From Ylistrum balloti (taxonomy: Eukaryota), in the NCBI RefSeq assembly GCF_031769215.1, contig NW_026782282.1, forward strand, positions 1,736,001 through 1,800,000: a stretch of DNA of 64,000 nt, read 5' to 3'. Positions 372-25,029 of the stretch are shown one piece after another. A model generated the notes under the pieces. That model made no database searches. It worked only from the letters and a program-made list of their open reading frames with translations, and was not told where the DNA came from. Both the position numbers and the translations under genes were made by a program. Position 1 is the first letter of the stretch, and every line of letters begins with the position of its first letter.

Positions 372-3300
372 CATATTGGCTTGGATAGTGTCCTCTTTAA
401 TTTCGTCTTTTGCCCAGGTGGCTCCATTTTCCTTTGGACCATCAAGTTCCATTGATTCTTTATTTTCTTCAAGATTTCTTTTTTCTTCAGATTCTTCTTC
501 CTCTTTCCTCCTTTTCTCCTCTTCCTCTTCTTTAATTTTCCTTTCTGCCTCTTCTTGCGCTTTTCGTAATGACCTTTCTGCTTGTGTCTTGGCAACTTCA
601 TCTAAAAATTATCCAATTCATAGCAGTTCTATCTTTTAAATTTGTTCTATTAGCAAGTAAAAACAGCAAATGATCAATACTTGAAGCAGGCAATAAAATA
701 TAAGCATATCTTTAAAATGTTATACTTAAAAACTAATTTTTAAATGTGTAAATTTCCATTGCTTTATTTTCAAACTAATCTAACAAAGTAATTTGTGAAT
801 CACCAGTTTTGAAAATGACCAAGATTTTTGATGCACATTTCATTCCTTTCATGACTAAAATATATAACATTACTGGAGGATGGCTTACTTATTTCCAACT
901 CCAAAGCAGATTTCTTGCTGCCCTTGTGTAACATTGTGAGTTCGTGAGTGACAGCCATCTGTTTGAGAATATCTTCTTTGAATTCATAGATGGCGTTGAC
1001 CAGATCTTTCTCCCAGCCTTCAGAGTCCAGTACCTCCAGCAACTCGTCAATCTGACCCTTTGTACTGTAGTACCAAACTTCATTTTCACCCTCCCTGGAA
1101 ATTAAAGCAAGTTCTTTTTCTCAATTCCAGCTTATGATTGAACATACTTTTTATTCATATTTTATATTGCTCCTGTAAAATTTCACATATAATATACATC
1201 TATAGTTGGAGAATATATACATAATACACAAAATACACAAAAATCTATTTACATAACTTTATATTCTTTCCAACTTCGGAAAATGTTTCAGAATTTTTGT
1301 AGAACTGTGTATCTATTTCTTCTTTCATTTTTTTTTCTTTGCATGCTTTTTTTTTTTTTTAACAATCAGAACAATTTTTATATTTACAATTATCAAATAA
1401 CTAGAAAATGAAATCATAAGTTAACCAATACCTACTTAGGCAAATCATGTGGTCATAACCACACACAAATTTTAATGCCTTATTATTTACAATGAAATGA
1501 AATGTAATTCTACATCATTCTAGTTTATTCTTTTTAACAAGTGAAGACTTACACAATGATTCTCCGCACTAAAAACCAATACTTTCTTCCATGTCTGTCA
1601 AACCCAATAGGTTCCTGTCTGCATAAAAGACCACTTTTTTCTGCCTCAGATACACAATCTGTAACACCTTTAATCTACAAAAAAAAAAAAAAATTAACTC
1701 ATATTTAAAAGTCACGATAAATTTAATTTGCAAAGATCTACTATAAAATCATAGAATTTTGTAAGAGATTTATTATCATTGATTTAAAATTGATATGTCA
1801 CCAATCTATTCAAATAAGTAACAAAAAGTATAGGATTTTACAGTCTATTGATTCCTATGCAGGTTTCAGACCTGAACAGTCCTGAGCTGTTTTCCAATGT
1901 AAGCTTAATGTGATTAGATCATTCTAACAGATGAGTGTCTGATATCAAGACTGGGCACTCACTTCTTCTTGACTGAAACCATGACTTTTTCTTACAACTT
2001 TTGGTGTCACTTTTCAAATTGACAATGTATAACAGGGATGAAATGAGTAGTTTTGGATGCATAAATATATATACCTCATTGGTCAATGAATTTAAGCTAG
2101 TTGATTTTTCATAGTTCATCACGAACTCAAAAGTTATTTACACCAAATTATGTCAGAATTCTATGTTTTCGTCAGAGGTGTGCTCTAGCTCCAGCCAGCA
2201 CACCAGACCTCTGTTCTTTAAAATGACTGATATCGGACCCAGACATGTGCAGGACTAGTAATTCCACCAGCAGTAAACTTGATGCCCAATAATTTCAGAT
2301 TTCATGTAATCACGAAACAATGAAACTATTAAATTTTCATTGATTTCCCACTGGATTAGAATATTTATAAAAAAATTTGCTTGTCAGCATCTACTTTAAT
2401 TAAATTAAAAACATCTGACTTTGTCCTCAAAATCAAGAAAAATGTTGCAATTGATTTTGAAAGTGATGATCTCCATTGACGCACCTTGTGAGCTCGGCAA
2501 ACTCCACAGACCCAATCTTCCTCCGGTACCTCTTCCATGGGAGGTTCCACACATGTTAGGTGATACACAGCAGAGCAGGTTTCACAACACAGCAAATCTC
2601 CGAGTCTGCTTAAGAAATGAATGCTCAGTTAAAAAATCAAGATATCAATGCTACCCCAAAACAAAAGTTGATAAAATTCCTTAAAATACCTTATGTACTG
2701 TTAAATGAACATTGATAAAAATATAAACTGTTATTCTATGGTAAGCAAATATTTCCACTTTTCCATATATCTAACCTTTACTTTAAATCTGTTATATGCA
2801 TAAAAGTTTTCAGAAAGAAACTTACTTATGGCAGTTTCTGCAGTGATCATCATATTGGATATTTCCTTCATTCATAATTTCTTCTCTCACATTGTTTGTA
2901 ACCAAAAACAGGTCAGTAAGAGTCTTCAAAACTTTAAGTCTTTCTTCAACAGGCACAAAGGGGAAGTCTGGATGTTCTAATGATTCTATTGCCACCTTAT
3001 ACTCTGGATATCTGTCAGACTCTGTGTCAAGTAGTGCTCGGATGGATTCTGGCCAAGTAAAAGCATCAACGAAGAACAATGATATATTGATGCTGTCCTT
3101 CATATCCGAGGGACCAAATGCTGTATTATTACCATCTTCTTCACGCCATAACGCTTTATATAATGTTATATGAATTTCTGTCAGCAGCGAGGAAATTTCA
3201 TCACTCATTATTGCTGCACAAAAGTCCTCAAAGCTAAATGGGGATAATCTGAGAATGGTACGGAAATGTCGCAGCACTTCATAGATGCTTAAACTTTGCA

Positions 3301-3829
3301 TAAGGTTTTCAATGGGTATCAACAAATCTGTTGAACTAGGAGGCATAGTTAATGGTGTAATATCTTTGTCGTCCGGTAGCTCTGGTGTTTTAGGTCTTCT
3401 TCCAAAAAACAATTTTCTCCTGCCAGCAGAGCTACCTATAGTACTGAAGCTATCATCACTATAATCAGAGTCAGATTCTTCATAGCTAGCATCTGAAACC
3501 GGATCGTTTTCATCCAGATCATCTATAACGTCACTTGCTTTATCCTCTGGATCAAGACTAGATCGCGATTGATCATCGTCTTCAAATATCATGTTTTGAA
3601 TGAAATGTCTACCTCTTTGTGCAGCCTCACGGGACCTGCCCCTCCCCTGTCCCCGTATCGGGGTTCCAGGCGTACTGACTGGGGTACTCGACCGAGAACT
3701 TGGATCACTTGATGGAGTTCCATGGTTTTGATAGGCTTTGGGCTTTCTCAAAAAATTACTCCTGGGCCTTACGGATGACAAAGGCGTCTTTGGCGGTCGC
3801 CCTCTTCCGCGTCTTCCTCTAGTGGACAT
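372..3829 (-). CDS. BPTF: BPTF / NURF301 nucleosome-remodelling factor subunit, 5' part (exons 3829-2826, 2605-2485, 1674-1553, 1094-889, 601-372; continues beyond window start)
   Basis: N-terminal AT-hook-like RGRRGRGRPPK, DDT domain (LSIYEVLRHFRTILRLSPFSFEDFCAAI), PHD finger split over exons 1-2 (DDHCRNCHKLGDLLCCETCSAVYHLTCVEPP...WVCGVC) and WHIM-type motif (EPIGFDRHGRKYWFL). All junctions are GT-AG and phase-consistent. An alternative in-frame ATG lies at 3838. Confidence 0.95.
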
Positions 3830-4538
3830 AATGCACACTTTAAAATACTTCCAGGTGCTCTAATGTTCCCTGCTACTTGAAAAAGGCGGCCCTTGTGCAC
3901 ATCGGCAGCCCTCTATATCGGATTTAGTGTCCATGTTTCAACTTTCGGAAGCCGCCATTTTTCTCCAAATTTGATCACGTGATCAACGCAATCGTAATAT
4001 ACAATGGAAGTCCTACCGTTAAGTGCGGCTACCTCGGATTTTCGTACATCAGATTTACGATATTTACCTTCACTTTGATAATTTTGATCGCGTTAAGTTT
4101 TTCATGTGGTGAAAAAGGATCTTAAGGAGATTCAAATCGAATAATGTTATTGTTTCTTTCTGATCCGTCTTTCTCGCACCCGATATAAGAGAGAAACTCG
4201 CATTGGATGGTTCATTTTAGACAGTATTGAATTATACTATTAAATTCTGCCCTCTGGCGTCGTGATTATGTACTTTTCAGTTTTATTTGTATATTTTGAA
4301 GATACTTAAACAGTCAAAGTGATAGTAGACCCATGTGACACAGTTTTAGGAAGAAATGAAAGTTGTTGTTGCAACTTTTATTAGCCAATCATATTTGACT
4401 TTACATACGTATTGCGTTATTGTCTCATTTGAAACACCTCGAGACTTATCGATTTCATTTATGTTCAAAAGTTAGACACAAGGAGTTCGGTAAAACTAGA
4501 TATTCACGAACGTCAGAAGCCGGTCCACATGTGGCAAA
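3830..4538. promoter_or_regulatory. Bidirectional promoter region between BPTF and AIMP2
   Basis: Divergent start codons are about 710 bp apart and the interval is CpG-enriched. A YY1-type GCCGCCATTTT lies at 3951-3961 and a CTCF-like CTGCCCTCTGGCGT at 4247-4260. Confidence 0.65.
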
Positions 4539-7500
4539 ATGTCGCAAGTAATGTATAAGGTTCAGCCGTATTACGACTCGAATGTAACCTTAGATTTACC
4601 AGATAATATGTACAAATTGCCAAATATGCAGACAGATACAGACAACTGCGAAAAGGTATGTATTTAATGGTGAAATTAGTTCAATCATGACCTACTAGTA
4701 ACAATTCAGTATACGATACGACAATTTACGATTTCCAGGCAGGCAACGGGTCTAATTACTTGGTGGTTTTTAAATCCGCATACATAAGTACACGCGATTG
4801 TTAATATCAAATACTCCAATCAGATGTGATTTATTATCTTTATGTTTTGTATACTGTGTGGTTTTCTATGAAGCGTGAAGTAATGGAAATGACACCACTT
4901 TCGTTTTCTCTGCTTAAAGTGTGCCGAATGTTTTGCCATATTTAGCTCTAAAATACTTATTATAAAATAAAAGGCCAAGGAAGTGCAAACATCGTGCTTA
5001 ATTTCGTTTCCTAGTGATTTTGATTTATGTGAAATGCACACATTTGACATAGCGGCGACCACCTCAATATATGGATTGTCTACATCTGACGTCACAAGTT
5101 CAACGCTGTCAAAACAGCACTATAGAAATATACCAGGTAGCTGCCATTGTGCGTTTGATATGCGAGCTGTTTAGATAGTAATGTGGTATATTTTGTTGCT
5201 ACTTCTGTAAATTATGTTTAGAGTGCTACAAACTTTTTACAATTTTAATCATGAGTAGGCAAACACTGTACTGTATCAAGTGTCTAAACACACATGAAGA
5301 TGCTATTTAAATCAATTAGACTGAATTGATAAATCATAATTAGATTAGGTAGACTAAAGCAATGGACAGAGATTATTTCATTAAAAAACTAAGATGCATA
5401 ATCATAACTTGTAAATTGCATGTATATGGAGAGAAAACAGAACCTCATGATTCACTTATGTTCACAAAAAAAACTATTATTACAGAACTATTTTATCAAA
5501 GTTTATGATATAAATTAGCATCTCATACATAAGTATTGTAAATAAGATCAAATATTTTAATTATCGACCTAACATAAGGAGTGCACAATGATGTCAATTT
5601 GTCCTTATAATATGTATTTAATATGTAGTCTTAGTATGAATCAGCAGACGTCAATATTGAAGTTATTTTGTAAATATTTTTCTCTGATACATTTCTCTAT
5701 TTTTGAACCTTAGCGCTACCACAGTATATAACTTTGAAATACAGAAATTCTGCCATGAAATAGAGCATATTCCTTATCAGTGCTCAAAAACTATACAATG
5801 CTACCAGGCTGTATTTCCACTCAAACCCACTAGTATATAAAGCTTTGTGTACTTGTGCTTATCCTTTTGAAAATGTCTTTCACTTCTCTTTATGGTGTCA
5901 TCTTGATACCAATTAAAGGAATATATTGATCTAAAATTTTACTACTTTGAATGTTTTGTTCAATTTGGATAATATTTTGTTCGAAAATTCTCTTTTAGTT
6001 TCAAATATCTTCAGACATGTGCAGGCTTTCATTAAGTTTGGTAAAATTTTGATTTTAATAGTAATAATTATTGTAGATATATGCATGTTTCCATGACAGT
6101 AATTGTTTTCCATGTGTAAACATATTGGGAGAAGGCATAAAGTTTAATAACTTGTACCTCAGTGCTCCAGATAACTTTTTGACATGTGGGGTTTTCACTC
6201 CTACCTTTATAAATTGAGGGGTTTTTTCACCCCTGCCTTCAACAAGTGTATGGGTTTTTCCATATTAGGGTAACACTGAATTTGTAAACATTTTTGACAG
6301 CGCCATATTTGCTATGCGACTGGTTTATAATCACGATCAAGAAAGCGCTTGTTACGAGTTTCGTTTACTTGATAAGTGTCTGTTTGACTTAGATTATTGA
6401 GTTTTCTAACTACGTAATATTGGAGCCGGACATTGACGCAGAGTCCGGATTTCGCACGGGTTAATGACGCAAATCTTATTTTTTTCCTAGCGTGAAATTA
6501 GAAATATTGTGCGTGAAAACGCATTCACGCAGGCTATCTGGAGCACTGTGTACCTCATCTTAAATTTGTCTATACTTTGTTTCAAAATACTTTTTCTTCT
6601 GCAATGCTTGAATGAATTTTAACCAAAGTTGGTCTTATACATCATTGTGAATGGGGAATCATTGTTTAAATTCAGAATTTTAATTCATCCCTTAGGGATC
6701 TGGGGTCAGGGCCCCAAATGTGGAAGTAAGACAATGTTTTGTTTCAACTCCAACTTAATTCCTCGGTCATTTTCAACCAAATTTGGCCTGAAACATTTTT
6801 AGGAAGTGGCAGTGATATCAAATGTGCATGGAGTGATTCTGAGGTTGTCCTGACCAAATCTTATTTTTAACTCTTTGGTCCAAAATCCAACATAACTCAT
6901 CTTAAACAAATAGTCTGAACTTCTTTGCAAGTGTCATTCACACCATCGACAAAAATGTTTGGAGTTTGATTTGTTCAGAAAAAGACAGAGTTGATATGCT
7001 GTTATTTTTCAGACTGATTATTTTTCAATAGTAGCAATCTTGTAACATGATTATGCAACTGTTTTTCATTTATTATTATGTTATTTATGAGTTTCTGATA
7101 CTTTCAAGTGATGTTGAAAATTTGAATTTATCAGATTTGTCAGACCACCATCAGCAAAACTCTGTGGTTTGTCCGTCCTTTGTCAAATGTCAGATGTCCA
7201 TTAAGGGCCATGGCCCTCTGGTTTAATATCCTAATCCTGTAGGAATAGATTTTCCCCAAATTTGATCAGAAGCATTCTTGGTTGAAGGGGAATCAATTAC
7301 GTATAAATGGCGGGTCTCTGCTCCTTTGGTGAGAGGGGCAGGGCCCAGAAGGGGTAAAATTTTCAAATTCCTACTCCTTTTGTAGGAACGAATAGATGTT
7401 GCCCAAATTTGGTCTGATGCATCAGTGAGTGAAGAAACCAATCTTGTCTAAGCATCAGGTCTCAGCCCCCTGGGGCAAGAGAGTCAGGCCTGAGAGGAGA

Positions 7501-10500
7501 CAAAGAGAAAATTGTTTAAAATCCTTCCCTTCCTGTAGGAAGAAATGGATGTTGCTCAAATTTGGTCTGAAGCATTCTTGTGTGAAGAGGAATCAATTTT
7601 GTATAAACGGTGGATCTCAGCCCATTGGGGCCAGAGAGATGGGGCCCAAAAGTGGTAATAGAGCAAATCAAAAATTTGGTCAAAGAATTCTTAAGTGAAA
7701 GGGAATTATTTTCTTATAAATGGTTGGTCTTGGTAGAGCCCAATAGGGAAGATAGTGTAATTTTTTTAAAAAATTATGATTGGATTTTGTCAAAATTTGA
7801 TGCAAAGGGGTGAAGGGGAATCAATGTTGTATAAACGGTGAGTCTCGGCCACCCATTATATGGAAATAATTCTTAAAAATCCTTCTTGGTTAGTAAGAAT
7901 GGCATGATTCTGTCACTATTTGATCTGAAGTATGTCTGGCTTTGCTGACCTAGTTAGCATCAGAGGAGTGAACTCAATGGAAATATAGATATACTGAACA
8001 AAATAAGTTAAGGATCATAAACTTGAAACAGTGCAGTTTTACATACAAATAATAATATGATTATATTTTAAATTTTAATGACAGAACATTCATTTTAGTC
8101 TTTAATTACACAAAACAAATTCATTTGTGGTAATTGCTACCAAGAGCAGATAACCCTGAGTAACAGCACCCTTGAAATCAAAGTGTAAGAGGAAGTAGAG
8201 CAAGTTAATCATGTAGACAAGGAAAACTCATCAAACTGCAATTGGCAGTTTAATAGGCAGTATGACCTCCGTTGACATCAATAACTGCCCTGCAACGTCT
8301 GCACATGCTCCTTATTAGTCGTCGGTGGCTGATCTGTGGGATGCGCTGCCATTCCTCTTGCAGAGCAATCATAAGCTGTTGGCGGTTCTGTGGCGGATTA
8401 GGTCGAGCTGAAACCCGGCGTTGCAAGGTGTCCCAAGCATGCTCGATAGGGTTCAGATCAGGAGAACGACTTGGCCAGTCCATGCGAACGATTGCTTCAC
8501 GTTGAAGATAGTCGTTGACCACACGAGCACGGTGAGGACGAGCATTATCATCCATCAGAATAAAATCATGGCCAACAACTCCTGCAATGGGCCTTACTAT
8601 AGGGTGTAGAATCTCGTCCCTGTATCGAACAGCTGTTAAAGATCCATTGTCTATGATGTAGAGGTCTGTATGGAAGTCAACACTGATCCCTGCCCAAACC
8701 ATCACTGACCCACCACCAAAGCGATCATGCTGGACAACACAGCAGTCTGCATAGCGCTCTCCTTGGGTTCTCCATACCCTCCTCCTACCGTCATGGAAGT
8801 CAACACAAAACCTAGACTCATCTGTGAACATAACACTTCTCCAATGACGTAATTGCCAATTCAAATGATGAGTGGCCCATTGATGTCTGGATTGTCGATG
8901 ACCTCTGGATAAAATTGGTCGGACTGCTGGTCTTCTAGCTCGTAAATTAGAGGCATGGAGTCTGTTTCTGATTGTCTGGGATGAAATCCTTAGATTTGTA
9001 GCACGCTGAAACTGAAGATTCAAGACAGGAGCACTCAAAAACCGCTGACGTCGTGCCGTGATGCAAATGAATCTGTCCTGTCGGGCTGTCGTACAGCGTG
9101 GTCGTCCAGATCTGGGGCGTTGACGGACGTTATTTGTCTGTTGATAGCGATTCCATAGCCTACTAATCACGCTCTGAGAAACATGAAGCTTTGCCGCCAC
9201 ATTTCGTTGAGTTTGACCAGCTTGAAGGAGCCCTATAGCTCGCGCGGCTTCCATATCATTTAAGTGTCTTCGCATGATTAGTTTTTCAAGTTTTCGTTAC
9301 AAATTCATTAAATGTTTCCAAATTCAACTTTTTTTAGCTTAGAAGTAACAGAATCAAAACCTGCAAGATTCCTCTGTAGTAATAGACCAGTCTGTTTTTC
9401 ACACCACCATAGTTAACTAGAGCGGAACGGCAAGACCTTCAGATGCACGTGCTTTCACCTTTGACATGACTTTAGGTACATATTGGAGAAACTACGAGTG
9501 CAATTACCGGCAATACATGATTTGAATTTTTAAAGATATTATGGTCACAATTTATGATCCTTAACTTATTTTGTCCAGTATATGTTGTGTGTCTTGTGCT
9601 TGTATATTTTAAAGTCCTTTTCCTTTACTTTAGATGAAGTGATTTCAGCCAAGCAAAGCCGGTTGATCAATACATGCCCTATGGGCCATTAGTTTATATA
9701 TTGCTGAAATGAAAAGTATATTTTTGTGCTGAAAAAAAAAAAACAATAATTATTCTCTCACATTTTGAAGGAGCGCTTGTCATTTATTGTTTCTATAAAC
9801 AAAATTTACAGTCTCAGAATAGACTTTTGCCTGATTCCTTGTATACTTCAGTTGCTAGGTAATTAAAGTATGTTTGGTAAGGCTTTTTCTACTCTCAGTT
9901 TCAATATAATTCAAAGAAATTATTTCAGGGGAAAGGGAGTTAATAGGTGTTGCTGGATGAGAAGAAGTAGTAAGTCAGCCAAGATGGGAACTTTAAGTTT
10001 TCTTTTTGTCCAAGTCATACTAAAGTGCTATATTAATTGGTTATACCAGCATTAATGATACACATTGAATTTTCTTGAGAAACTGCTTGCAAATGCTGAA
10101 TTTGTACTTAATTACATTAAGATTTGCTATTCTGATGATTTAGGATCAAATAGTCGACAATCAATCAAAGTTACGCTGATTACAAGGATTGTGGACAGAA
10201 ATTGTTTGTTAAATCACATGTGAGGGTTTTTAAACACTCCATGGCAGCTCCATGCAAAACTTAATACTCACAGTTTTTGAGTTTGTCGATTTGATAAATA
10301 CTTGAACCTTCGTAATTGCCACTTCCAACAAATGAATACTTTGCAAGAACTTTTATATTCCATATATTTGCAGAATTGGATTATCTGATTGAACAATTAT
10401 AGATGAGTTATGTAAATATAAAAGGTCATCAGAAGGTCAACTTACACAACATAGTCCAGAAAATGAAATGAGAGAACTGATTTTGATTACCAGTAGATTG

Positions 10501-13500
10501 CATATTTCTTAGGACAAGAATTTGGCTCAAGTTATGGAGCACACTTCCTAAAATTTAACCCTGGTATCTGATTCATCGTCTCCTTCTGGTTAATCACATT
10601 TTTTGAATACATGAGCACCTTGAAGTGATTGTCCATTAGGGCTGCAACGATACATTGACCTGACGATACAATACGTATTGCGATACTTGCCTCACGATAT
10701 CATACATATTCGATACATAAATGATACGTATAGGATAAAGGAATAGACTGAACTATATATATGTATATATATATAAGTAGGCCCAGATTGGTGACCGGTA
10801 CGATGCCGGTGGTGGTATTAATCAGGAGCTTCTGTAGTCGCCGACTTGGCCATGCTTGAAGCTGCACTTTCCGCCATATCAGTTTAATATGTTTACAAGC
10901 ATTCAGATTACCTCGCCTCAATTACAGTACCTTCCATCTTAGATGACATGGAGTCGGCCGCGGTGTTCCGAATGGTTTACAAGGGAGAATCTAAAAACGG
11001 ACGGGGGCAACATCAGGAATGTATCGTAGGCGTATCGTGATATTGTAAAAGTGTATCGTGTATCATATCAAAGACAAAATATCATGATATATCGTAATTT
11101 GATATATTGTTGCATGCTTATTGTCCATCCATCTGTGCATGTGTAGCACAAAGAAGTGTACAAGCTACCTCAAAACCAGTTTCTTAACTTTAGGTCACAT
11201 ATTAACACCACAGTATCACAACTTCAATTTCTGCGTCATATTAGTCTCTGGTAGTCATTAGTCAAGGTTAAAGGGTCAAAGGTTACACTTGACCATGCAT
11301 ATTTGAAATAAATTAAGATAGAATTAAAAAGCATTTGTATGAGATTTCACATGTACCTTTCAACAGATTTGGTTTCTATTCTCACCATATTACTTCCACC
11401 TCATGACATTTTGGTAAACATTGGTCAGAATTTAAGAGTCAGGGGTCACTTTGGATTTATAATGATCTGGGTGGTGTGGTGGAGGGGGATCCATATCTAT
11501 GCAGCATAATGTGACTTTGATTTTAATTCAATTCCATGATATTAATCCTACAAAAAAGGTTTAATTAAAGAACCTAATGGGTAAATATACTGTTTTTGTT
11601 GTGTAGAAGAAGTGTTAACTGATAAAACATAATCATATTTAGGCTGTGTAAACTTTGAAATCTACCAGTATCTTTCTTGTCACCTACTGTCACCCATCTG
11701 CTGCTGATGTTATAGGGTCCGTGGAAGACACACACTTGACAATGTGTGGTATCAGAGTTGTAGATGAGAAAATATTTCAGATCTAACAGCCTTAGCCAAC
11801 TTTGCTGATTACAACTGTGTGAATGAATGGATACATGCTATTTGTAATAAAGTATCAGAAATGAAAATTTTTCCCAGACAGAATCAGTCAAGGTTATTCT
11901 AACTACAATCATAACAGACTTACTGGATTAGTAGGCATTACACATGCATGTGTTTGAAATGAAGTGTAGGGTTGTTAACTCAAGTACAAACATCTATCTT
12001 TGTGGTTGTGTAGAGGTGGACTTGTGCAGTAGGTAAGAAGCAACCTGATCTCTTACTCTCCTCACACCCCTCCCCTTGTATAGCGTTCCTTATTACATAT
12101 AAACACAGCTGACAAGCTGAGGCCTCAGTGTTGCAGCACAACCATCTCGTATGCACGTGTGTCATAGCTACTTCCAGAACTCTCCTAGAGAGTACCCAGT
12201 ATCAGGATATCAATTAATTACAACTCTCAGCTGTATGTTTTACACAGAGAGTGGGTACCAAATTTTGTGTCAGATATGGGGAAGGCTATTAGTTCATGTA
12301 AGGAGAAAATTACATCATTTCACAGCAGCAAGAAGGCACAGCAGAGTGATATTTTAGAAAAGGAAAAACAAGAAAAGGCCAAGCAAAGTGATAACTTAGA
12401 GGAGAAACAACAAAAGGCCAAGCAAAGTGATATTTTAGTGAAGGATAGACAAGAAAATGCTGAGAAAAGTGATAATTCAGTGGAGAAACAAAATGTTTGG
12501 CAAAGTGATATTTCACAGAGTGAAAAACAAGAAAAGGCAAAACAAAGTGGTATTTCAAAGGAGGAGAAACAGGGAAAGGCCAAGCAAAGTGATATTTTAG
12601 TGAAGGACAGACAAGAAATAGCTAAGAAAAGCAGTATATCAGTGGAGAAACAAGAAAAGGTTTGTCAAAGTGATATTTTAGAAAAGGAGAAAAAAGACAA
12701 CGCCAGGCAAAGTCATGGCTTAGAGAAGGAGAAGCAATATGAGGCCAAGCAAAGTGATAATTCAATAAAAGAGACTACTGAAATAGTACAGCAATATGAT
12801 GTTCTTTGTAAAAATCTCAAAGAAAAGAGGGAACTATGTGATATTCCACAGCATAAGACACTTGAAACTGCCAAGCAAAATGTTCATCTAGTATATACAC
12901 CACAGGAAAAGAAAAAGGAAGATGATAATGTTGATAAGTCTTCACAAGAAAAGGTTGAGGAAAGTGAGGTACAGGATGAATTAAAGCAAACTAAACTGGA
13001 CAATAAACAAGATACAACCAGACAGAAAGAATTAGAGCAACACAAGTTACTACCAGCTAAGGAAGAAAATTGGTTAATTAAGGCAGAACAAACTGAAAAT
13101 TTAGTTGATCATCATGATAAAGGTGTAAATGATGAATTCACAAAAAAAACTGACATAGCTTTAAAAACAGGTGATGATATTCAAACGTATGATATGGAGG
13201 GAGGCAGTTTTGATGATGATGCTGGCAGTTTTATAGAGAAAAAGGATTTGACAAAAAAAAGGCAGGAAATGGAAGGTCATAGGAAGGTTCATAATGGAGA
13301 TGCTGTTCTATCAGAGGATGTTGTAGAAGATGAAAAGTCAAAGGTACCAGAGGCCTGATGAATGATTGAAAGGTCAAGATGAAGGGTTTAAAGGTGCAGA
13401 GGTTAAAAGGTCAAACTGAGCAGAGGTCATAGGAACAGAGAACAGAATTATTGTTTAACCCACCCTATTACCAGTGGATTCAAATGGTTGGGCTACATGT

Positions 13501-16500
13501 GTTTTCACTTTGTAGGTAATGTTGGTCCTCCATGCTTACATTCAAAATGATTCTTCAGGGTAGATCTCCTGTAAACTAAAACCATTTACATGAACTATAA
13601 TATATCTTGGATTAACGTAAAAATGCATGACAGAAGTAGGTTACTGTGACCTATTTTCTTGCCTATGTCAATAGTTTCTTTGTTGTATGTGGTGGGATTG
13701 CAGAGTGTCATACCAAATGTCTAAGTCTTCAATATTGACCACCAAACCCTATATCATTAAGAAAAAGTGTTGGGGGATATCAGTGTAATGGATATCAGTG
13801 TAATCCAATCAGTATACCATATTACATCCTTGTAAATCAGTATACCATATTACATACTTATAAATCAGTATATTACATCCTTATAAATCAGTATATTACA
13901 TCCTTATAAATCAGTATACCATATTACATCCTTATAAATCAGTATATTACATCCTTATAAATCAGTATATTACATCCTTATAAATCAGTATATTACATCC
14001 TTGTAAATCAGTATACCATATTACATCCTTATAAATCAGTATACCATATTACATCCTTATAAATCAGTATATTACATCCTTATAAATCAGTATATTACAT
14101 CCTTATAAATCAGTATATTACATCCGTATAAATCAGTATATTACATCCTTGTAAATCAGTATATTACATCCTTGTAAATCAGTATATTACATCCTTGTAA
14201 ATCAGTATACCATATTACATCCTTATAAATCAGTATATTACATCCTTGTAAATCAATATACCATATTACATCCATATAAATCAGTATATTACATCCTTAT
14301 AAATCAGTATACCATATTACATCCTTATAAATCAGTATATTACATCCTTATAAATCAGTATATTACATCCTTGTAAATCAGTATACCATATTACATCCAT
14401 ATAAATCAGTATATTACATCCTTATAAATCAGTATATTACATCCTTATAAATCAGTATATTACATCCTTATAAATCAGTATATTACATCCTTGTAAATCA
14501 GTATACCATATTACATCCTTATAAATCAGTATATTACATCCTTATAAATCAGTATATTAAATCCTTATAAATCAGTATATTACATCCTTATAAATCAGTA
14601 TACCATATTACATCCTTATAAATCAATATACCATATTACATCCTTATAAATCAGTATATTATATCCTTATAAATCAATATACCATATTACATCCTTATAA
14701 ATCAGTACATTACATCCTTATAAATCAGTATAGCATATTACATCCTTATAAATCAGTATACCATATTCAACATAAGTGCTCTTTATACTTACTAAAACAA
14801 GAAAGGGTGGTGTGAATAAAAGTATTTGTATGAGAAATGAAATTTTAGTAATAGAAAACACAAGCAAATTTACTGAATGGATGAAAGGCCGAGAATTATC
14901 TATTTGAATAATGTAGGAGCACATGCTGTTGTGAAAAGAGGTGAACTTATTAGTTTGAATACTGTACGAAGTTACTTTATGAGAACACTATCCCGAGAGA
15001 TTAATATTGTTTGGTACATTAAGACAGTAAGGGAAATAGATGAATCATATATTTTGTCAGTTGTTAACACAAGCTCTGATATAGATGATGAATGCCTGAT
15101 TTTCAAAAATAACTTGGGTTATGCATGGATGAATTTAGTATTTAACATGAAATTTTCTGTTCGCTGTTTCACATTCTGATACACATGGGCAAGTTTTATA
15201 TTGTTATAATATTTCAGAGGAGTACCTTTGTAATCTAAGAAATACCTGACTTGGTTTTTGTATAGTTCTATACACACTTGGATATATATACTTTATGACT
15301 AAATGTCACACACAGTAATATTGTAATGCTAAATAGCAGTCCTTTACCTGGTTTATACCAAGGCATTGTGGTAAAAAGTTAATTTCTCTTCATACACGCT
15401 TTGTGGAACTACTTAGAGGTTTTGTACAATATTTATGTCAAAAAAATATAAACTCGCTTTGATATTCAGGAATCTTTATGTAAAATCTTTATTAAAAAAA
15501 ACAGAGGAATGAAACAAGGATGATATGCCTTTTTAAACCAATGTGGTCAACATACTTGTATCAAAGGTCAGGGGGTGAGCTTATTACAGGACAATAAAAG
15601 ATTTTGGTATTCTAATGGACAATAATAGATACTGTAAAGTGTTCTAGTCCCTCCATTGCTGGAGTAGTTATTAGGGGAGTGGAACCTCTTTTTTCATTTG
15701 TAATAAAACCCTTATTTTACTTTGATTTCAGCAAAGACTATTTAAAATATCAGTGAATTTGACTAGCATAGCTTACAATAAGACTTCTGATTGGGATGAA
15801 GATAATTACATTTTCATGTGTATTAGCCAATTTGCATATATTTATATTAAAAGTTTGCTCATGCTGGGTATACTCCAGGTTATGTCCCCTGTTTGAGACA
15901 ACCACATGTGTTGCTGTCATTTCTAGCTCACCTGGTCCCAAAGACCAGTGAACTTAGTCTATACCCCAGGGGCCAGAGGGGCTGGGTCCAATAGGGGGAA
16001 ATATGGCAAACAGTTTAAAATCCTACCCCTGGAGGAATCTTTGGGTTTTGCCAAAATTTTGTCTGAAGCATTCTTGGGTAAACAGGAATCTTGTTTGTAT
16101 AAGGGGTTTGTCTTGAACCCCTGGGGCCAGAGGGGCATGTCCCAATAGATAAAATTGCGTAAATTCTTTAAAATCCTACTTCTGCGGTAGCAAAATCCTT
16201 AGATTTTGCTCAAATTTAGTCAGAAGCTTTTTGTATAAATTGTGGGTCTCCAGCACTCTAATGTCAGATGGGGCAGGGCCCAAATAGGGAAAATAGAGCA
16301 AATTCTATGAAATCCTACTCCTCCTGAAGAAATGATTGAAATTTTGTACAATCTGTTAAGAAGCATTCTGGAGTGAATGGAAATAAATTTTGTGTAGACA
16401 GAGGTTCTCAGTCTAGTGTGGCCAGAGGGGCAGGGTTCAATAGGAGAAATAGAACAATTTTTTTTTTCAATCCTTCTTCTCTTGGAATGATTCAGGTTTG

Positions 16501-18682
16501 ACCTAATTTGATTTGAAGCATCCTTTGATAAGAGAACTAAGTTTTGTATGAACAGTGCATGTAAGCCCCTATTGGCAGAGGGGACACTTCTAATGAGGGA
16601 ATTAGATACAAGTGTTTTAAATTATTTTCCATTATAATATATTGATCAATTGTAGCAAACTAAATCAGGTGGGTGATACATGACCTATGGGCCTGTTGTT
16701 CCATTGATACATTTTTTCTTTGTTCTTGGCTGTTAGAAGGACCTAAACAAATTATACAATAGTTAGAATCAGAATAATTCATAACCTGTATTTATGTGCA
16801 TATCATCATACAAGATCAGATTGAAATTCAGGAATCAAAATCATCTGTTTGTTTCAGATGGAAACAGCATCAACGGGTGTGGATAATTCGGTAGCTGCCC
16901 TAGAAAGTAAACAGACAGCCATACTACAGAGATTAGGAGAGCTGAAGGGTGTGCTGGAACAGCTGAACAAGAAGTATGGTAGTGCCACCACTGTGTCATC
17001 ATCCACCACATCTTCTACCATGATCCTACCAGTGAGCAGCATTTCCTTTTAGTTTTGCTTGAGAAATAGAACCTTGTATTCTTGGTGTATTTATATGATT
17101 TTACTGCTGTGAGATTCCTTACATTGCCCTTGGGTTGAGTTGGGGGGATTCCCTTTTCTTAGTTAAGATAACATCTCATCAACAATGCCAAGCATTTAGT
17201 TATAAAACATTTATCTCTTGTTTTTTCCAGTCATGTTATGATGTAACTTAGTAAGGAAACCTTTGACTGGTAAAATGAAAGACTACATTAAATATTTTTT
17301 GTTTGGGATTTTTTTTGTTCAATTCATGAGTACTCTAAATTCATTCATGTCCTGAACATGAACTGATTAACAAAAGATGTTGACATAGATTATAGTACAA
17401 GTGGATTTTGTAGACTGATTTATCCTAAAAATCAAGTGCCAACAAAAATGTAAACATTTGCAAAACCATTAAATGTTAGTCTCATGAAAATATATGATTT
17501 TACATCATTCTGTTTGATAAGAGAGTCATTACTAGTGTAATTGGGAAAGATATCTTTTTAATGAAGCCAAGTTGGGAGTTTAAGACTCATTAAAAGTCTA
17601 CAAGAGAATTTCAAAAGTTTTAAAACTGGGTTATCTAGGGAATATCTGTTGCAATAAGACAAAGTCATGTCAGGAAATTAAGTCACTTTTTATAATGAGT
17701 GTGATTTTTAGACATTTTTATAATGAGGCCATGTTTGGAATTTAAGACCCATCATAATGAGGTGTTTATTTCGTGGTAATTACCATTAAATTAATTTTCT
17801 TTGTTTTCATTCCAGGGTGGAGTTGTCCATGACATTGTCATCAACGCTGATCCAGAGAACCCACCGGTCATTGTGTTTGTACTGTTCACACTCCTTAAAG
17901 AGAGGTGTAGGGTATATGGGTCAAGTTTAGTCCATTCTAGTGTGGTCAGTGTGCCTGACCAGCTACGCAATGTCTTCAGTGACCAGGATAACAACTGTCC
18001 TCGTGGCAGCCACCAAGTGGCAATCACTCTCATATGGAAAAAAGGTGAATATTGAATTTCGGTGAAAACAGATTTAATGAACTCATTAGTAATTGGAAAT
18101 GTCTAGAACAGAATTGTTTGTGGTTTAATGTCATTTATATACTGATAATTGCAACACAGGTTTTGATTGGAAATGATTTAGTGTCATTTCATGTAGTTTA
18201 GAACAGACCTAATGCAGACGTGTTTCCAATTGTTTGCCATTTGCATGAAGTTATCATATCATTATTCCTTGCTTGTAGTCGAGAATGGTCCAAACCTGAT
18301 AGTGTCACCACACAACCAGACAACAATCCAAGGGGAAGTAAATATTGCCAGATACATTATGCGTCTTATCAACCAAAATTACGATAACTCAGACCCTGTT
18401 GCCTCAACTCAAATTGACGAATGGTTAGATTCCGCCCAGCAACAACTCCACCATGGTAACGTGAAGCAAAAGGCTGCTGCTGTGAAGTCTCTTAATGCCA
18501 GGCTTGGAAGAAATGATTGGCTTGTAGGATCTGAGATGTCATTGGCCGATATGGTGATGTGGGCTGCACTGTTTCAAACCAATCAAATGTCAAATGCCCC
18601 GAACAATGTGAAAAAGTGGCTTGCATCATGCGATAAGAATTCAGTTTATCAATTTGCAAAGACAGTTTTAAATGGAAGGTAA
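4539..18682 (+). CDS. AIMP2: AIMP2 (p38/JTV1) multisynthetase-complex scaffold; exons 4539-4655, 16858-17031, 17816-18044, 18279-18682; about 307 aa
   Basis: Exon 1 MSQVMYKVQPYY...LDLPDNMYKLPNM matches the AIMP2 N-terminal MYQVKPY/MYRLPNV motifs. Exon 2 carries the coiled coil ALESKQTAILQRLGELK, exon 3 DIVINADP, and exon 4 a GST-like C-domain (IQGEVNIARY...DWLVGSEMSLADMVMW). Junction phases are 0, 0, 1 and consistent. AATAAA at 18825. Confidence 0.93.
6160..6548. mobile_element. MITE with 14-bp TIRs and 7-bp TSD (P-superfamily-like termini)
   Basis: CAGTGCTCCAGATA (6160-6173) and TATCTGGAGCACTG (6535-6548) are perfect inverted repeats. TGTACCT flanks both sides (6153-6159, 6549-6555). Confidence 0.8.
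6590..7228 (+). mobile_element. 5'-truncated Helentron-associated non-autonomous element (HINE-like, family B)
   Basis: Long collinear similarity to 59246-60125 (e.g. TTTGGTCCAAAATCCAACATAACT, AACAAATAGTCTGAA, CCACCATCAGCAAA). Ends in TGTCAGATG followed by a GGCCATGGCC hairpin and TCTGGTTT. Confidence 0.7.
7992..9580 (-). mobile_element. Full-length Tc1-family DNA transposon (about 1.59 kb)
   Basis: 30-bp TIRs TACTG(A/G)ACAAAATAAGTTAAGGATCATAAA with one mismatch, and TA flanks at 7990-7991 and 9581-9582. The ends could be shifted by 2 nt. It contains an intact transposase ORF. Confidence 0.95.
8250..9275 (-). CDS. Tc1 DD34E transposase, 341 aa, uninterrupted
   Basis: N-terminal HTH, GRPR motif, and catalytic triad TDESRF / MDDNARPH / SPDLNPIEHAW. 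I counted 34 residues between the second D and the E. Confidence 0.95.
   Translation of the reverse strand: MRRHLNDMEAARAIGLLQAGQTQRNVAAKLHVSQSVISRLWNRYQQTNNVRQRPRSGRPRCTTARQDRFICITARRQRFLSAPVLNLQFQRATNLRISSQTIRNRLHASNLRARRPAVRPILSRGHRQSRHQWATHHLNWQLRHWRSVMFTDESRFCVDFHDGRRRVWRTQGERYADCCVVQHDRFGGGSVMVWAGISVDFHTDLYIIDNGSLTAVRYRDEILHPIVRPIAGVVGHDFILMDDNARPHRARVVNDYLQREAIVRMDWPSRSPDLNPIEHAWDTLQRRVSARPNPPQNRQQLMIALQEEWQRIPQISHRRLIRSMCRRCRAVIDVNGGHTAY
10637..11120. mobile_element. hAT-type non-autonomous MITE, 484 bp
   Basis: Perfect 8-bp TSD TTGTCCAT (10629-10636, 11121-11128). The left end is TAGGGCTGCAACGATA and the right end a degenerate ATTGTTGCATGCTTA. Arrays of CGATA/TATCG subterminal motifs occur at both ends. 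Confidence 0.85.
12231..13358 (+). CDS. K/E/Q-rich repetitive open frame inside AIMP2 intron 1; candidate cassette exon 12231-13343, or ORF from ATG 12276 to TGA 13358
   Basis: The frame is open from 12189 to 13358, unusual in this AT-rich intron. It has about 13 repeats of 36/39/42 nt (all multiples of 3), consensus AKQSDILEKEKQEK. A phase-0 acceptor CTCTCAG| lies at 12230 and a phase-0 donor AAG|GTACCA at 13343. Confidence 0.6.
   Translation: MYVLHREWVPNFVSDMGKAISSCKEKITSFHSSKKAQQSDILEKEKQEKAKQSDNLEEKQQKAKQSDILVKDRQENAEKSDNSVEKQNVWQSDISQSEKQEKAKQSGISKEEKQGKAKQSDILVKDRQEIAKKSSISVEKQEKVCQSDILEKEKKDNARQSHGLEKEKQYEAKQSDNSIKETTEIVQQYDVLCKNLKEKRELCDIPQHKTLETAKQNVHLVYTPQEKKKEDDNVDKSSQEKVEESEVQDELKQTKLDNKQDTTRQKELEQHKLLPAKEENWLIKAEQTENLVDHHDKGVNDEFTKKTDIALKTGDDIQTYDMEGGSFDDDAGSFIEKKDLTKKRQEMEGHRKVHNGDAVLSEDVVEDEKSKVPEA
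13809..14766. repeat. Minisatellite of interspersed 23-bp and 28-bp units, about 38 copies
   Basis: CCTTATAAATCAGTATATTACAT and CCTTATAAATCAGTATACCATATTACAT read directly from the sequence. Confidence 0.95.
15920..16700 (+). mobile_element. HINE-like element, family A, complete ends
   Basis: 5' end TTCTAGCTCAC followed by the CTGGTC-CCAAA-GACCAG hairpin, internal repeats of about 155 bp, and 3' end TCAGGTGGGTGATACATGACCTATGGGCCTGTTGTT. It is inserted in T-rich sequence with no TSD. Confidence 0.75.
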
Positions 18683-24054: not shown

Positions 24055-24430
24055 TGTCACTGTACCTGGAGCAACTAGTTCTCAAATTCATGGAAGAATC
24101 CTGAAATTCCTATGGCAGTGCCTACAACAGACATTTCAACATTATATTAAACCTATATGAAATCAGAATTGTTAATTTGCAGTTTATGGTATAGTTGATA
24201 TGTTTTTCTTTAGTATTAAAAGCTGCAGGGAAAATAAAGTTTTCAGAAGAACATTTCCTACACATGACAAGCCTTTAGTTTCAATATTATTTATATGTGA
24301 AAAAGAGAACAGGCCTGCATCACTGGACATCTGCCAGACATATGACAGATGCCACGCCAAGGAATAAGCTAACCCGTCTTGTGGACCAAGTAAGCTAAAA
24401 AAAAATTATTATAAGAAGTGTGCATACAAC

Positions 24431-24951
24431 ATAGTTACTGCCCATCATTCTACACAGAATGCTAAGGGTACTACAGGGTACATGTTTACAGCCTATCATT
24501 CTGTACAGAATCCTAAGTGTACTACAGGGTACATATTTACAGTTCATCATCCTGTACAGAATCCTAAGTGTACTACAGGGTACATATTTACAGCCTATCA
24601 TTCTGTACTGAATACTAAGTGTACTACAGGGTACATATTTACAGTTCATCATCCTGTACAGAATCCTAAGTGTACTACAGGGTACATATTTACAGCTCAC
24701 CATCCTGTACAGAATTCTAAGTGTACTACAGGGTACATATTTACAGCTCATCATCCTGTACAGAATCCTAAGTGTACTACAGGGTACATATTTACAGCCC
24801 ATCATTCTGTACAGAATCCTAAGTGTACTACAGGGTACATATTTACAGCCTATCATTCTGTACTGAATACTAAGTGTACTACAGGGTACATACTTACAGC
24901 TCATCATCCTGTACAGAATCCTAAGTGTACTACAGGGTACATATTTACAGC
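24431..24951. repeat. 51-bp tandem repeat, about 10 copies, in PIGX intron 1
   Basis: Unit TACAGGGTACATATTTACAG(C/T)(C/T)CATCAT(C/T)CTGTACAGAATCCTAAGTGTAC. It explains the 17-aa periodic ORFs on both strands. Confidence 0.95.
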
Positions 24952-25029
24952 CAATTGTTTTGTTCAGATCCTACATGTATGGAATACCAGTGCTTACGAT
25001 GATATTTAATACATACCAGACAATGGAAT

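What the first reader, a model, noticed from the sequence alone, without database searches (positions are those of the whole stretch)
12231..13343. Candidate giant frame-preserving cassette exon inserting a 371-aa charged repeat into AIMP2
Seen in the sequence: an 1113-nt stop-free segment in AIMP2 intron 1, same strand, bounded by an acceptor (TTAATTACAACTCTCAG|, 12230) and a donor (AAG|GTACCA, 13343). Both sites are phase 0, exactly like the exon 1 donor and exon 2 acceptor, and the frame closes four codons after the donor, as expected for an exon. It encodes about 13 diverged repeats (consensus AKQSDILEKEKQEK) whose lengths are 36, 39 or 42 nt; frame-preserving length changes of this kind suggest selection on the protein. 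Established: vertebrate AIMP2 residues about 1-36 anchor LysRS, the next helix binds AIMP1 and ArgRS, the GST-like domain binds AspRS and EPRS, and splice variants (AIMP2-DX2) alter function. Inference: inclusion would give a protein of about 678 aa with a long flexible or coiled spacer between the LysRS anchor and the rest of the multisynthetase complex, an architecture I do not know to have been described.
Basis: partly seen in the sequence, partly recalled or inferred. Interest (0 to 1): 0.8.

Follow-up and report, generated by a model that had tools for sequence, protein, structure and literature searches.

The report
Scallop AIMP2 alternative first exon
The long open stretch in the first intron of the scallop AIMP2 gene is a real coding exon, but it most likely starts a second version of the protein: it replaces the piece that holds lysyl-tRNA synthetase with a probable lipid-anchor signal and a charged repeat spacer, and the same start signal is found in ten other molluscs.

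Summary
The sequence features are real. The frame is open from 12189 to 13358; 0 of 2000 dinucleotide shuffles reach that length. It holds about 11 repeats of 13-14 residues starting AKQSD, and a phase-0 donor at 13343.

The window is identical to Ylistrum balloti assembly GCA_031769215.1. RefSeq already models this exon joined to AIMP2 exon 2 (XP_060074839.1, 624 aa; XP_060074841.1, 611 aa; both misnamed "myb-like protein X").

Both models start at the ATG at 12276 (MGKAISSC...). That AG is absent in three other scallops. The 45 nt behind it differ by indels that are not multiples of three, and Argopecten has in-frame stops there.

So this is an alternative first coding exon, not a cassette. 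The product lacks the exon-1 peptide that matches the human LysRS-binding peptide.

Long AIMP2 forms in 11 molluscs (scallops, unionid mussels, Haliotis, Aplysia, Arion, Littorina, Pomacea) all begin with invariant M1-G2-S6-C8. That is a myristoylation-type consensus with a nearby cysteine. The rest of the exon is unalignable between classes.

My reading is a membrane-tethered, LysRS-free AIMP2 isoform. Lipidation and the transcription start are inferred. No RNA reads were available. I found no paper describing it.

The parts
4539..4655 (+). Canonical AIMP2 first coding exon (exon 1a), 39 codons, phase-0 donor AAG|gtatgt. It encodes the two LysRS-binding motifs (MYKVQPYY, NMYKLPNM).
   Evidence: The only PDB matches are the human AIMP2 N-terminal peptides from four entries, 4DPG, 4YCU, 6ILD and 9DPL (E 0.008-0.024); that these are LysRS co-crystals is from my knowledge. 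The exon is 72-76% identical in three other scallops.
11983..12275 (+). Conserved non-coding island directly upstream of the alternative start codon. It is a candidate internal promoter and/or 5'UTR, with an invariant AGCTGAC block and purine at -3 before the ATG.
   Evidence: Apart from one 83-nt block shared with Pecten only, it is the only part of the 12-kb intron 1, besides the exon itself, that aligns to other scallops. Indels here are not multiples of three, and the acceptor AG is not conserved. The transcription start is not mapped.
12276..13343 (+). Alternative first coding exon (exon 1b), 356 codons. It runs from ATG 12276 (MGKAISSC...) to the phase-0 donor AAG|GTACCA.
   Evidence: It equals residues 1-356 of XP_060074839.1 (P0003). 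An intact orthologous ORF with an MG start is present in Mizuhopecten, Argopecten and Pecten.
12276..12299 (+). N-terminal motif M-G-K-A-I-S-S-C. Gly2, Ser6 and Cys8 are invariant in 11 mollusc long isoforms. Predicted N-myristoylation site with a nearby palmitoylatable cysteine.
   Evidence: Alignment A3. A DNA pattern for this motif hits once in the whole 64-kb window and once per orthologous locus, always at this exon's start. Lipidation itself is inferred from the known consensus.
12333..12759 (+). Array of about 11 diverged 39-42 nt repeats (13-14 aa units, AKQSDILEKEKQEK-like).
   Evidence: The same AKQS[DE] unit occurs with other unit lengths and copy numbers in Mizuhopecten (14 aa, 7 units), Pecten (13 aa, about 13 units) and Argopecten (12 aa, about 20 units). 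AlphaFold2 predicts long helices 3-86 and 98-188.
16858..17031 (+). AIMP2 exon 2, shared by both isoforms, 58 codons.
17816..18044 (+). AIMP2 exon 3 (start of the thioredoxin-like/GST-like domain).
18279..18682 (+). AIMP2 exon 4 with the stop codon (GST C-terminal domain).
   Evidence: The summed CDS is 1875 nt, which gives 624 aa plus the stop.

Best explanation
The segment is an alternative first coding exon (exon 1b) of the scallop AIMP2 gene. It lies in intron 1, about 7.6 kb downstream of the canonical first exon.

Transcripts of this form begin translation at the ATG at 12276 and read 356 codons. They splice from the donor at 13343 to the common exon 2 at 16858 and continue through exons 3 and 4. 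The product is a 624-aa protein.

This isoform lacks the 39 residues of exon 1a that carry the two LysRS-binding motifs. It keeps the exon-2 helix and the GST-like domain, which hold the rest of the multi-synthetase complex.

Its new N-terminus, MG-x3-S-x-C, is the only part of the exon conserved across molluscs. It fits the substrate consensus of N-myristoyltransferase, with a cysteine placed for palmitoylation. The isoform is therefore most likely tethered to a membrane.

In scallops the tether is followed by a 43-50% charged, near-neutral array of AKQS[DE] repeats, predicted helical, and then an acidic disordered tail. The repeat unit length and copy number differ in every species. This array most plausibly acts as a spacer of variable length between the membrane and the complex-binding part.

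Shown: the ORF, its conservation, the donor-to-exon-2 join in gene models, the absence of the LysRS peptide, and the motif conservation.

Inferred: an own promoter in the intron, lipidation, membrane location and the spacer role.
For: RefSeq X1 and X2 of Y. balloti start at MGKAISSC and join ...EDEKSK to METASTG of exon 2. The window is base-for-base the same as that assembly.

Four scallops keep an open MG-start ORF of 272-356 codons up to the donor. The other two + frames carry 15-51 stops. The donor TCAAAG|GTA is shared by three of them.

Canonical exon 1 lies upstream in all four scallops and in Haliotis, which has the same layout.

In every species with two listed forms, both N-termini join the same exon-2 residue.

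M1, G2, S6 and C8 are invariant in 11 species from two classes, while the rest of the first 45 residues is 17-27% identical. The motif pattern is unique in each locus.

Exon 1a matches the human AIMP2 N-terminal peptide, which was crystallised with LysRS. Residues 406-617 of the isoform match the AIMP2 GST domain structures.

A spliced Argopecten transcript contig joins exon 1a directly to exon 2 and skips the big exon.

The exon plus about 290 nt upstream is the main conserved island in the intron; only one other 83-nt block aligns, to Pecten only.
Against: There are no RNA reads. The only public run holding the stretch is genomic DNA. The splice join and the start therefore rest on gene models whose supporting evidence I could not inspect.

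The transcription start is unmapped, and an upstream non-coding exon is possible.

Y. balloti has Lys at position 3, which the PROSITE myristoylation pattern excludes. From my own knowledge, myristoylated visinin-like proteins start MGK.

The motif was not found in AIMP2 of Dreissena, Tegillarca or a starfish, so the isoform is not universal.

Seven of the eight listed variants in the exon are non-synonymous, including two adjacent changes in one codon. Residue identity in the spacer is therefore under weak constraint.
Confidence: 0.7

Rival explanations
1. Same exon structure, but no lipid anchor. In this reading the MG-start isoform is a soluble AIMP2 variant that lacks the LysRS anchor. It would act as a free or competing scaffold, in the way the human splice variant DX2 changes AIMP2 function. 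The conserved Gly2, Ser6 and Cys8 would serve another purpose, such as N-terminal processing, a degron or a binding site.
For: All structural evidence for the alternative first exon applies equally. Lipidation is inferred from a short motif only. Y. balloti has Lys3.
Against: A pattern of exactly Gly2, Ser6 and a nearby Cys kept for over 500 My (my own dating), while everything else in the exon diverges, is what a co-translational lipidation signal looks like. No other known signal needs these three positions (my own knowledge).
Confidence: 0.2
2. One reading: a cassette exon. Exon 1a (donor 4655) splices to the acceptor at 12230 and the exon runs to 13343. This gives a 678-aa protein with the repeat spacer inserted behind the LysRS anchor.
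For: In Y. balloti the AG is present, the frame is open from 12189, and all phases are 0, so the product would be in frame.
Against: No gene model recovered here, across the 11 species, joins exon 1a to this exon. The AG is CTG in Mizuhopecten and Pecten and is deleted in Argopecten. The 45 nt differ by a net 5-nt indel between Ylistrum and Mizuhopecten. Argopecten has in-frame stops 8 and 14 codons before the ATG. The pyrimidine tract is weak. The conserved feature is the ATG and the motif directly behind it.
Confidence: 0.07
3. It is not part of AIMP2. The open frame would be an independent nested gene, or a non-functional repeat that gene predictors have wrongly fused to AIMP2 exon 2.
For: The frame closes four codons after the donor, so a single-exon 360-aa product is formally possible. 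No Pfam family matches the exon. The non-repeat half has no relatives outside its own cluster among 1.84 billion representatives.
Against: The phase-0 donor is conserved in position. The read-through tail is not conserved: VPEA* here, VQRSRLQF in Mizuhopecten and VYQRS in Pecten. The Arion sequence, which has no genome contig on record and is probably transcript-derived, has the MG exon fused to the AIMP2 body. Independent annotations in 11 species agree.
Confidence: 0.03

Closest known systems
Vertebrate AIMP2 (p38/JTV-1) and its splice variant AIMP2-DX2
   Same: It is the same gene family, with the same four-coding-exon layout. Exon 1 holds the LysRS-binding peptide, and the thioredoxin-like plus GST-like C-terminal body is shared. 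As with DX2, an alternative transcript changes which partners the scaffold can hold.
   Different: DX2 skips exon 2 and keeps the N-terminus. Here the N-terminus itself is exchanged through a second first exon. The LysRS peptide is lost, and a 356-residue region with a lipidation-type start is gained. From my knowledge and the papers searched, no vertebrate AIMP2 form starts MG-x3-S-x-C.
Dually acylated N-termini (myristoyl-Gly2 plus palmitoyl-Cys), such as eNOS (MGNLKS...) and LAMTOR1 (from my own knowledge)
   Same: Initiator Met followed by Gly2, a small or Asn residue at position 3, Ser at 6, and a cysteine within the first 8-20 residues.
   Different: There is no sequence relationship beyond the motif. 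The modification has not been shown for any AIMP2.
RefSeq models XP_060074839.1 and XP_060074841.1 (Ylistrum balloti 'myb-like protein X'), XP_021361664.1 (Mizuhopecten), XP_069124364.1 (Argopecten 'golgin subfamily A member 6-like')
   Same: These automated models already contain exactly this exon joined to AIMP2 exons 2-4.
   Different: Their names come from the lysine/glutamate-rich composition and hide the fact that they are AIMP2. There is no Myb domain (the precomputed Pfam hits are only PF18569 and PF00043). None of the paper searches I ran found a description of the isoform.

Membership tests
AIMP2 gene (multi-synthetase complex scaffold) | Thioredoxin-like domain (PF18569) followed by a GST C-terminal domain | tested here: met
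   Precomputed Pfam hits on P0001 and P0002. GST_C in the exon 4 ORF. Residues 406-617 match AIMP2 structures 5A34 and 6IY6 at E 1e-42.
AIMP2 gene (multi-synthetase complex scaffold) | N-terminal LysRS-binding peptide with two MY(K/R)-x-P motifs | tested here: met
   Present in exon 1a (4539-4655), which matches the human peptide of 4DPG, 4YCU, 6ILD and 9DPL. Absent from the exon-1b isoform.
Cassette (internal, skipped-or-included) exon | Functional 3' splice site at its upstream edge, kept in related species | tested here: not met
   The AG at 12229-12230 is present only in Y. balloti. It is CTG in two scallops and deleted in a third.
Cassette (internal, skipped-or-included) exon | Reading frame continuous from the upstream exon through the whole exon in orthologues | tested here: not met
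   There is a net 5-nt indel between the acceptor and the ATG. Argopecten has in-frame stops 8 and 14 codons before the ATG.
Cassette (internal, skipped-or-included) exon | Transcripts joining exon 1a to this exon | not testable with these tools
   No RNA run holds the stretch. The one run laid was genomic DNA. No gene model recovered here has the join.
Alternative first coding exon | Own start codon in a usable context, conserved in orthologues | tested here: met
   The ATG has G at -3 and G at +4 in all four scallops. The MG start is found in 11 species.
Alternative first coding exon | Mutually exclusive with the other first exon, both joined to the same second exon | tested here: met
   Paired isoforms in Haliotis, Littorina, Pomacea, Sinanodonta and Potamilus share the same exon-2 junction. 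This rests on gene models, not on reads.
Alternative first coding exon | Own transcription start or promoter | tested here: inconclusive
   About 290 nt upstream of the ATG is conserved among scallops; apart from one 83-nt Pecten-only block it is the only conserved non-coding stretch in the intron. The start site is not mapped, and an upstream non-coding exon is not excluded.
N-myristoyltransferase substrates | Gly at position 2, small or uncharged residue at 3, Ser/Thr/small residue at 6, no Pro at 7 | tested here: met
   Gly2 and Ser6 are invariant. Position 3 is Asn in 8 species, Ser in 2 and Lys in Y. balloti. Position 7 is Ser, Arg or Leu.
N-myristoyltransferase substrates | Covalent myristate on Gly2 | not testable with these tools
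   Needs metabolic labelling or mass spectrometry.
Coiled coil or single alpha-helix (ER/K) domain, for the repeat array | Heptad hydrophobic periodicity, or an excess of opposite charges at i and i+3/i+4 | tested here: not met
   Power at period 3.5 is 0.01-0.32. The charge-pair excess has z of -0.3 to 1.5 in three species and 3.9 only in Mizuhopecten. Unit length is 12, 13 or 14 aa depending on the species. AlphaFold2 still predicts long helices.
Myb-like protein (the RefSeq name) | Myb/SANT DNA-binding domain | tested here: not met
   No Pfam family matches the exon at E up to 0.1. Only AIMP2 domains are found in the whole protein.

The most novel reading that the evidence does not exclude
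Molluscs keep an ancient second form of the multi-synthetase scaffold AIMP2, present before bivalves and gastropods split. It is myristoylated and palmitoylated at its N-terminus and cannot hold LysRS. It would place a LysRS-free part of the aminoacyl-tRNA synthetase complex, or free AIMP2 with a signalling role, on a membrane. In scallops a rapidly evolving AKQSD repeat helix would set the distance from the membrane.
Probability: 0.4. Interest if true: 0.7.

Novelty: new variant of a known kind. Interest (0 to 1): 0.55.

Why it matters
AIMP2 is the central scaffold of the animal multi-synthetase complex, and its N-terminal peptide is the only anchor for LysRS.

A conserved isoform that replaces exactly that peptide with a membrane-anchor-type signal would have two consequences. 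The composition of the complex could be switched by promoter choice. Part of the translation machinery, or AIMP2's non-translational activities, could be localised to membranes.

The case is directly testable with public scallop or abalone RNA-seq and with simple G2A and C8S constructs. It also shows that several RefSeq entries named "myb-like protein X", "golgin-like" or "uncharacterized" are in fact AIMP2 isoforms.

Tried and rejected
1. RNA evidence. The look-up of sequencing runs gave one run only. Laid on 11150-17100, within the 6,000-letter limit, it proved to be genomic DNA contigs that are colinear through the introns. No junction could be tested.

2. Chance ORF in purine-rich DNA. Rejected by the shuffles and by ORF retention in four species.

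3. Transposon-borne or pseudogene fragment. Rejected: the exon is syntenic in four scallops between exon 1a and exon 2. The Tc1/mariner copy at 8250-9275 is separate from it.

4. Pfam scan of the exon: no family. PDB sequence search: nothing for residues 1-356.

5. Exhaustive HMMER search with the non-repeat half plus exon 2. It found only its own cluster and a Pecten exon-2 match, so no transcript fragments bridging the junction were recovered.

6. The Logan Haliotis contig L005 carrying the MG exon is colinear with the genome and says nothing about splicing.

7. Coiled-coil or single-alpha-helix reading of the repeats: not supported.

8. RefSeq X2, which lacks 39 nt at 12378-12416, as a true micro-intron. 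No GT..AG placement exists, only GC..AG. An allelic repeat-number variant or an alignment artefact is more likely. This remains unresolved.

9. dN/dS was not attempted. The scallop exons are only 35-40% identical in protein and full of repeat rearrangements, so synonymous sites are saturated.

10. One literature search was badly framed and returned nothing useful. The other three found no paper on a lipidated or alternative-N-terminus AIMP2.
Full report
**What is in the sequence**

The segment is purine-rich (A 507, G 272, T 246, C 142 of 1167 nt). Even so, dinucleotide-preserving shuffles give a longest open run of only 66 codons on average and 168 at most. None of 2000 shuffles reaches the observed 389.

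Tandem Repeats Finder reports an array at 12333-12759 with period 42/81/162, about 10.5 copies and 67-77% matches. At protein level this is about 11 units of 13-14 residues that start A-K-Q-S-D. The CAG at 12230 and AAG|GTACCA at 13343 are present.

AIMP2 exon 1 runs from the ATG at 4539 to 4655, with donor AAG|gtatgt. Exon 2 starts at 16858 behind tgtttcag.

**Which genome, and what is already annotated**

A word-index protein search with the open frame returned two proteins. One is a 611-aa Ylistrum balloti RefSeq protein named "myb-like protein X isoform X2". The other is a 540-aa Mizuhopecten yessoensis protein. Both carry the AIMP2 Pfam domains PF18569 and PF00043.

The first cluster also holds isoform X1, 624 aa. 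The genomic locus of that protein (L004, GCA_031769215.1, JAUZWB010000316.1) is identical to the window at all 26,407 positions. The window is therefore this assembly.

Both isoforms begin MGKAISSCKEKITS..., which is the ATG at 12276. They run to ...VVEDEKSK (13343) and continue with METASTGVDNS..., which is exon 2 at 16858. I then fixed exon 3 at 17816-18044 and exon 4 at 18279-18682. The pieces sum to 1875 nt, which is 624 codons plus the stop.

The models start inside the segment and contain no residue of exon 1.

X2 differs from X1 only by the loss of one 13-residue repeat (12378-12416). No GT..AG placement of that 39-nt gap exists, only GC..AG. I take it for a repeat-number allele or an alignment artefact rather than a splice form. 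A DNA contig of run X1 skips a different 39-nt unit, 12486-12524.

**Cassette or first exon: the comparative test**

I fetched the orthologous loci of Mizuhopecten (L001), Argopecten irradians (L002) and Pecten maximus (L003). All four scallops share the same layout. A BPTF-like gene lies head-to-head upstream. It is followed by canonical exon 1 (72-76% identical in protein), the large exon several kb into intron 1, and exons 2-4.

In each species the large exon is open from an ATG-GGN start to its donor, over 272-356 codons. The other two + frames carry 15-51 stops (translations).

The start is MGNIISSC in Mizuhopecten and MGNVISSC in Argopecten and Pecten. The donor is TCAAAG|GTA in three species and AAG|GCAAAA in Argopecten.

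Upstream of the ATG the picture changes.
- Between that site and the ATG, Ylistrum and Mizuhopecten differ by indels of 1 and 4 nt, whereas indels behind the ATG are multiples of three.
- Argopecten has in-frame stops 8 and 14 codons before the ATG.

The 45 nt that the cassette reading needs as coding sequence are thus not conserved as coding sequence, and the acceptor is lineage-specific.

A spliced transcript contig from an Argopecten run (L006, SRR19746226) joins exon 1 directly to exons 2, 3 and 4. This shows that the canonical form skips the large exon.

Within the 12-kb intron 1, the large exon plus up to about 290 nt upstream of its ATG is the main block that aligns between scallops. 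The one exception is an 83-nt block shared with Pecten only. The island contains an invariant AGCTGAC block. This fits a promoter or 5'UTR of its own, but the transcription start is not mapped.

**The conserved part is the first eight residues**

Searching with the conserved C-terminal half of a 502-aa Haliotis AIMP2 gave long forms in many molluscs. The search admitted both canonical and long proteins by length. Cluster listings added more.
- Haliotis, 502 aa: MGNIVSRC
- Aplysia, 517 aa: MGNQVSRC
- Arion, 473 aa: MGNVISRC
- Littorina, 733 aa: MGNILSRC
- Pomacea, 431 aa: MGNVMSRC
- Unionid mussels Sinanodonta and Potamilus, 350 aa: MGSAASSC and MGSAASLC

Where a canonical isoform of the same species is listed, both N-termini are joined to the same exon-2 residue. 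Examples are Haliotis ...NCQ|TSSDP versus ...PNDK|TSSDP, and Sinanodonta ...KKKE|TDNSA versus ...TDVE|TDNSA.

In Haliotis the MG exon lies 12 kb inside intron 1, downstream of canonical exon 1 and again next to the BPTF-like gene.

An alignment of the first 45 residues of the 11 long forms has exactly four invariant columns: M1, G2, S6 and C8. Scallops are 17-27% identical to the other taxa over these residues.

A DNA pattern for ATG-GGN-N9-Ser-N3-Cys occurs once in the 64-kb window, at 12276. It occurs once on the + strand of each orthologous locus, always at the start of this exon. It does not occur in the AIMP2 loci of Dreissena, Tegillarca or the starfish Patiria.

The isoform is therefore old. 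From general knowledge, bivalves and gastropods separated in the Cambrian. It is not universal.

**What the isoform lacks and keeps**

Exon 1a (MSQVMYKVQPYYDSNVTLDLPDNMYKLPNMQ...) has AIMP2 N-terminal peptide chains from four entries (4DPG, 4YCU, 6ILD, 9DPL) as its only PDB matches, at E 0.008-0.024. Both MY-x-x-x-P motifs align. The PDB table names only the AIMP2 chains.

The MG isoform has none of it. Residues 406-617 match the solved AIMP2 GST domain at E 1e-42, and exon 2 is shared. The partners bound by those parts should therefore still bind.

**The spacer**

Each scallop has its own version of the AKQS[DE] array.
- Ylistrum: 13-14 residues, about 11 units
- Mizuhopecten: 14 residues, 7 units
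- Pecten: 13 residues, about 13 units
- Argopecten: 12 residues, about 20 units

The arrays are 43-50% charged and nearly neutral. They lack heptad periodicity. They show no consistent excess of i/i+3-4 opposite charges: z is -0.3 to 1.5, and 3.9 in Mizuhopecten only. Neither a coiled coil nor a classical ER/K single helix is supported.

AlphaFold2 without an alignment predicts two long helices (3-86 and 98-188; block pLDDT 54-94 along the helices, 85 or more over roughly 11-60 and 131-180). The C-terminal 170 residues fall mostly below 50.

Gastropods and unionids have unrelated, non-repetitive linkers of about 70-470 residues. Seven of the eight listed differences between DNA run X1 and the assembly inside the exon change the amino acid.

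What is kept is an open frame, composition and length. That is the behaviour of a spacer.

**Mechanism proposed**

A second first exon gives an AIMP2 that cannot hold LysRS. Its N-terminus fits the N-myristoyltransferase consensus: Gly2, Asn/Ser/Lys3, Ser6 and no Pro7. It also has a cysteine close enough for palmitoylation.

From my own knowledge, eNOS (MGNLKS... with downstream cysteines) is a precedent for this arrangement. Visinin-like proteins (MGKQNS...) show that Lys3 is tolerated.

I therefore expect a membrane-tethered, LysRS-free AIMP2. The lipidation, the membrane location and the separate promoter are inferences.

**Novelty**

The exon is already in RefSeq models, under names that hide its identity. 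Three useful full-text searches found no paper on a myristoylated AIMP2 or on an AIMP2 with an alternative N-terminus. A fourth search was badly framed.

Two earlier notes of this scan on the same genome concern alternative first exons in other genes and do not bear on AIMP2.

**Limits**

No RNA reads could be laid. The single run that holds the stretch is genomic DNA. I could not see the evidence behind the RefSeq models. The Arion protein has no genome contig on record and is probably transcript-derived, but that is from my own knowledge.

Noticed in passing
window 8250-9275 (-): An intact 341-aa Tc1/mariner-type transposase ORF (HTH_Tnp_Tc3_2 plus DDE_3) sits inside AIMP2 intron 1.
   Followed up: partly
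window 2822-3838 (-) and 3900-4676: A BPTF/NURF301-like gene (DDT, WHIM1) lies head-to-head with AIMP2. The shared 5' region plus exon 1 is 81-84% identical over about 780 nt in four scallops. The head-to-head gene order is kept in Haliotis.
   Followed up: partly
window 12378-12416 and 12486-12524: Two different in-frame 39-nt repeat-unit length variants. RefSeq isoform X2 lacks the first; only a GC..AG placement is possible, no GT..AG. A contig of DNA run X1 skips the second. These are probably repeat-number alleles.
   Followed up: partly
L003 16347-16589 and 16752-16994 (Pecten maximus): The 3' end of the alternative exon, with its donor, is duplicated in tandem (100% protein identity over 81 aa). 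RefSeq isoform X1 (346 aa) starts at an internal Met of this piece, although the full MG-start ORF at 15669-16589 is intact.
   Followed up: partly
window 13819-14000; 24429-24973: A 23-nt tandem repeat lies just downstream of the exon. A 51-nt tandem repeat of 10.7 copies and 89% matches is open on both strands and lies between the PIG-X and Snf7 genes.
   Followed up: no
window 15528-16520: This intron stretch is a high-copy dispersed repeat. Summed contig depth in DNA run X1 is up to about 1000, against about 9 nearby, with many rearranged joints.
   Followed up: no
P0040 (Logan contig, 773 aa): One ORF carries phenylalanyl-tRNA synthetase domains together with the AIMP2 thioredoxin-like domain. 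It could be a fusion or a chimeric contig.
   Followed up: no
Tegillarca granosa, P0017 and P0050: Two AIMP2 genes (KUTeg_004421 and KUTeg_004424) of 318 aa, more than 90% identical, lie on one chromosome. This looks like a recent duplication.
   Followed up: no
P0018 (Aplysia californica): Three RefSeq accessions encode the same 517-aa MG-start protein, and no canonical isoform turned up in the searches. This hints that the MG exon can follow different 5' leaders, or that it is the main form there.
   Followed up: no
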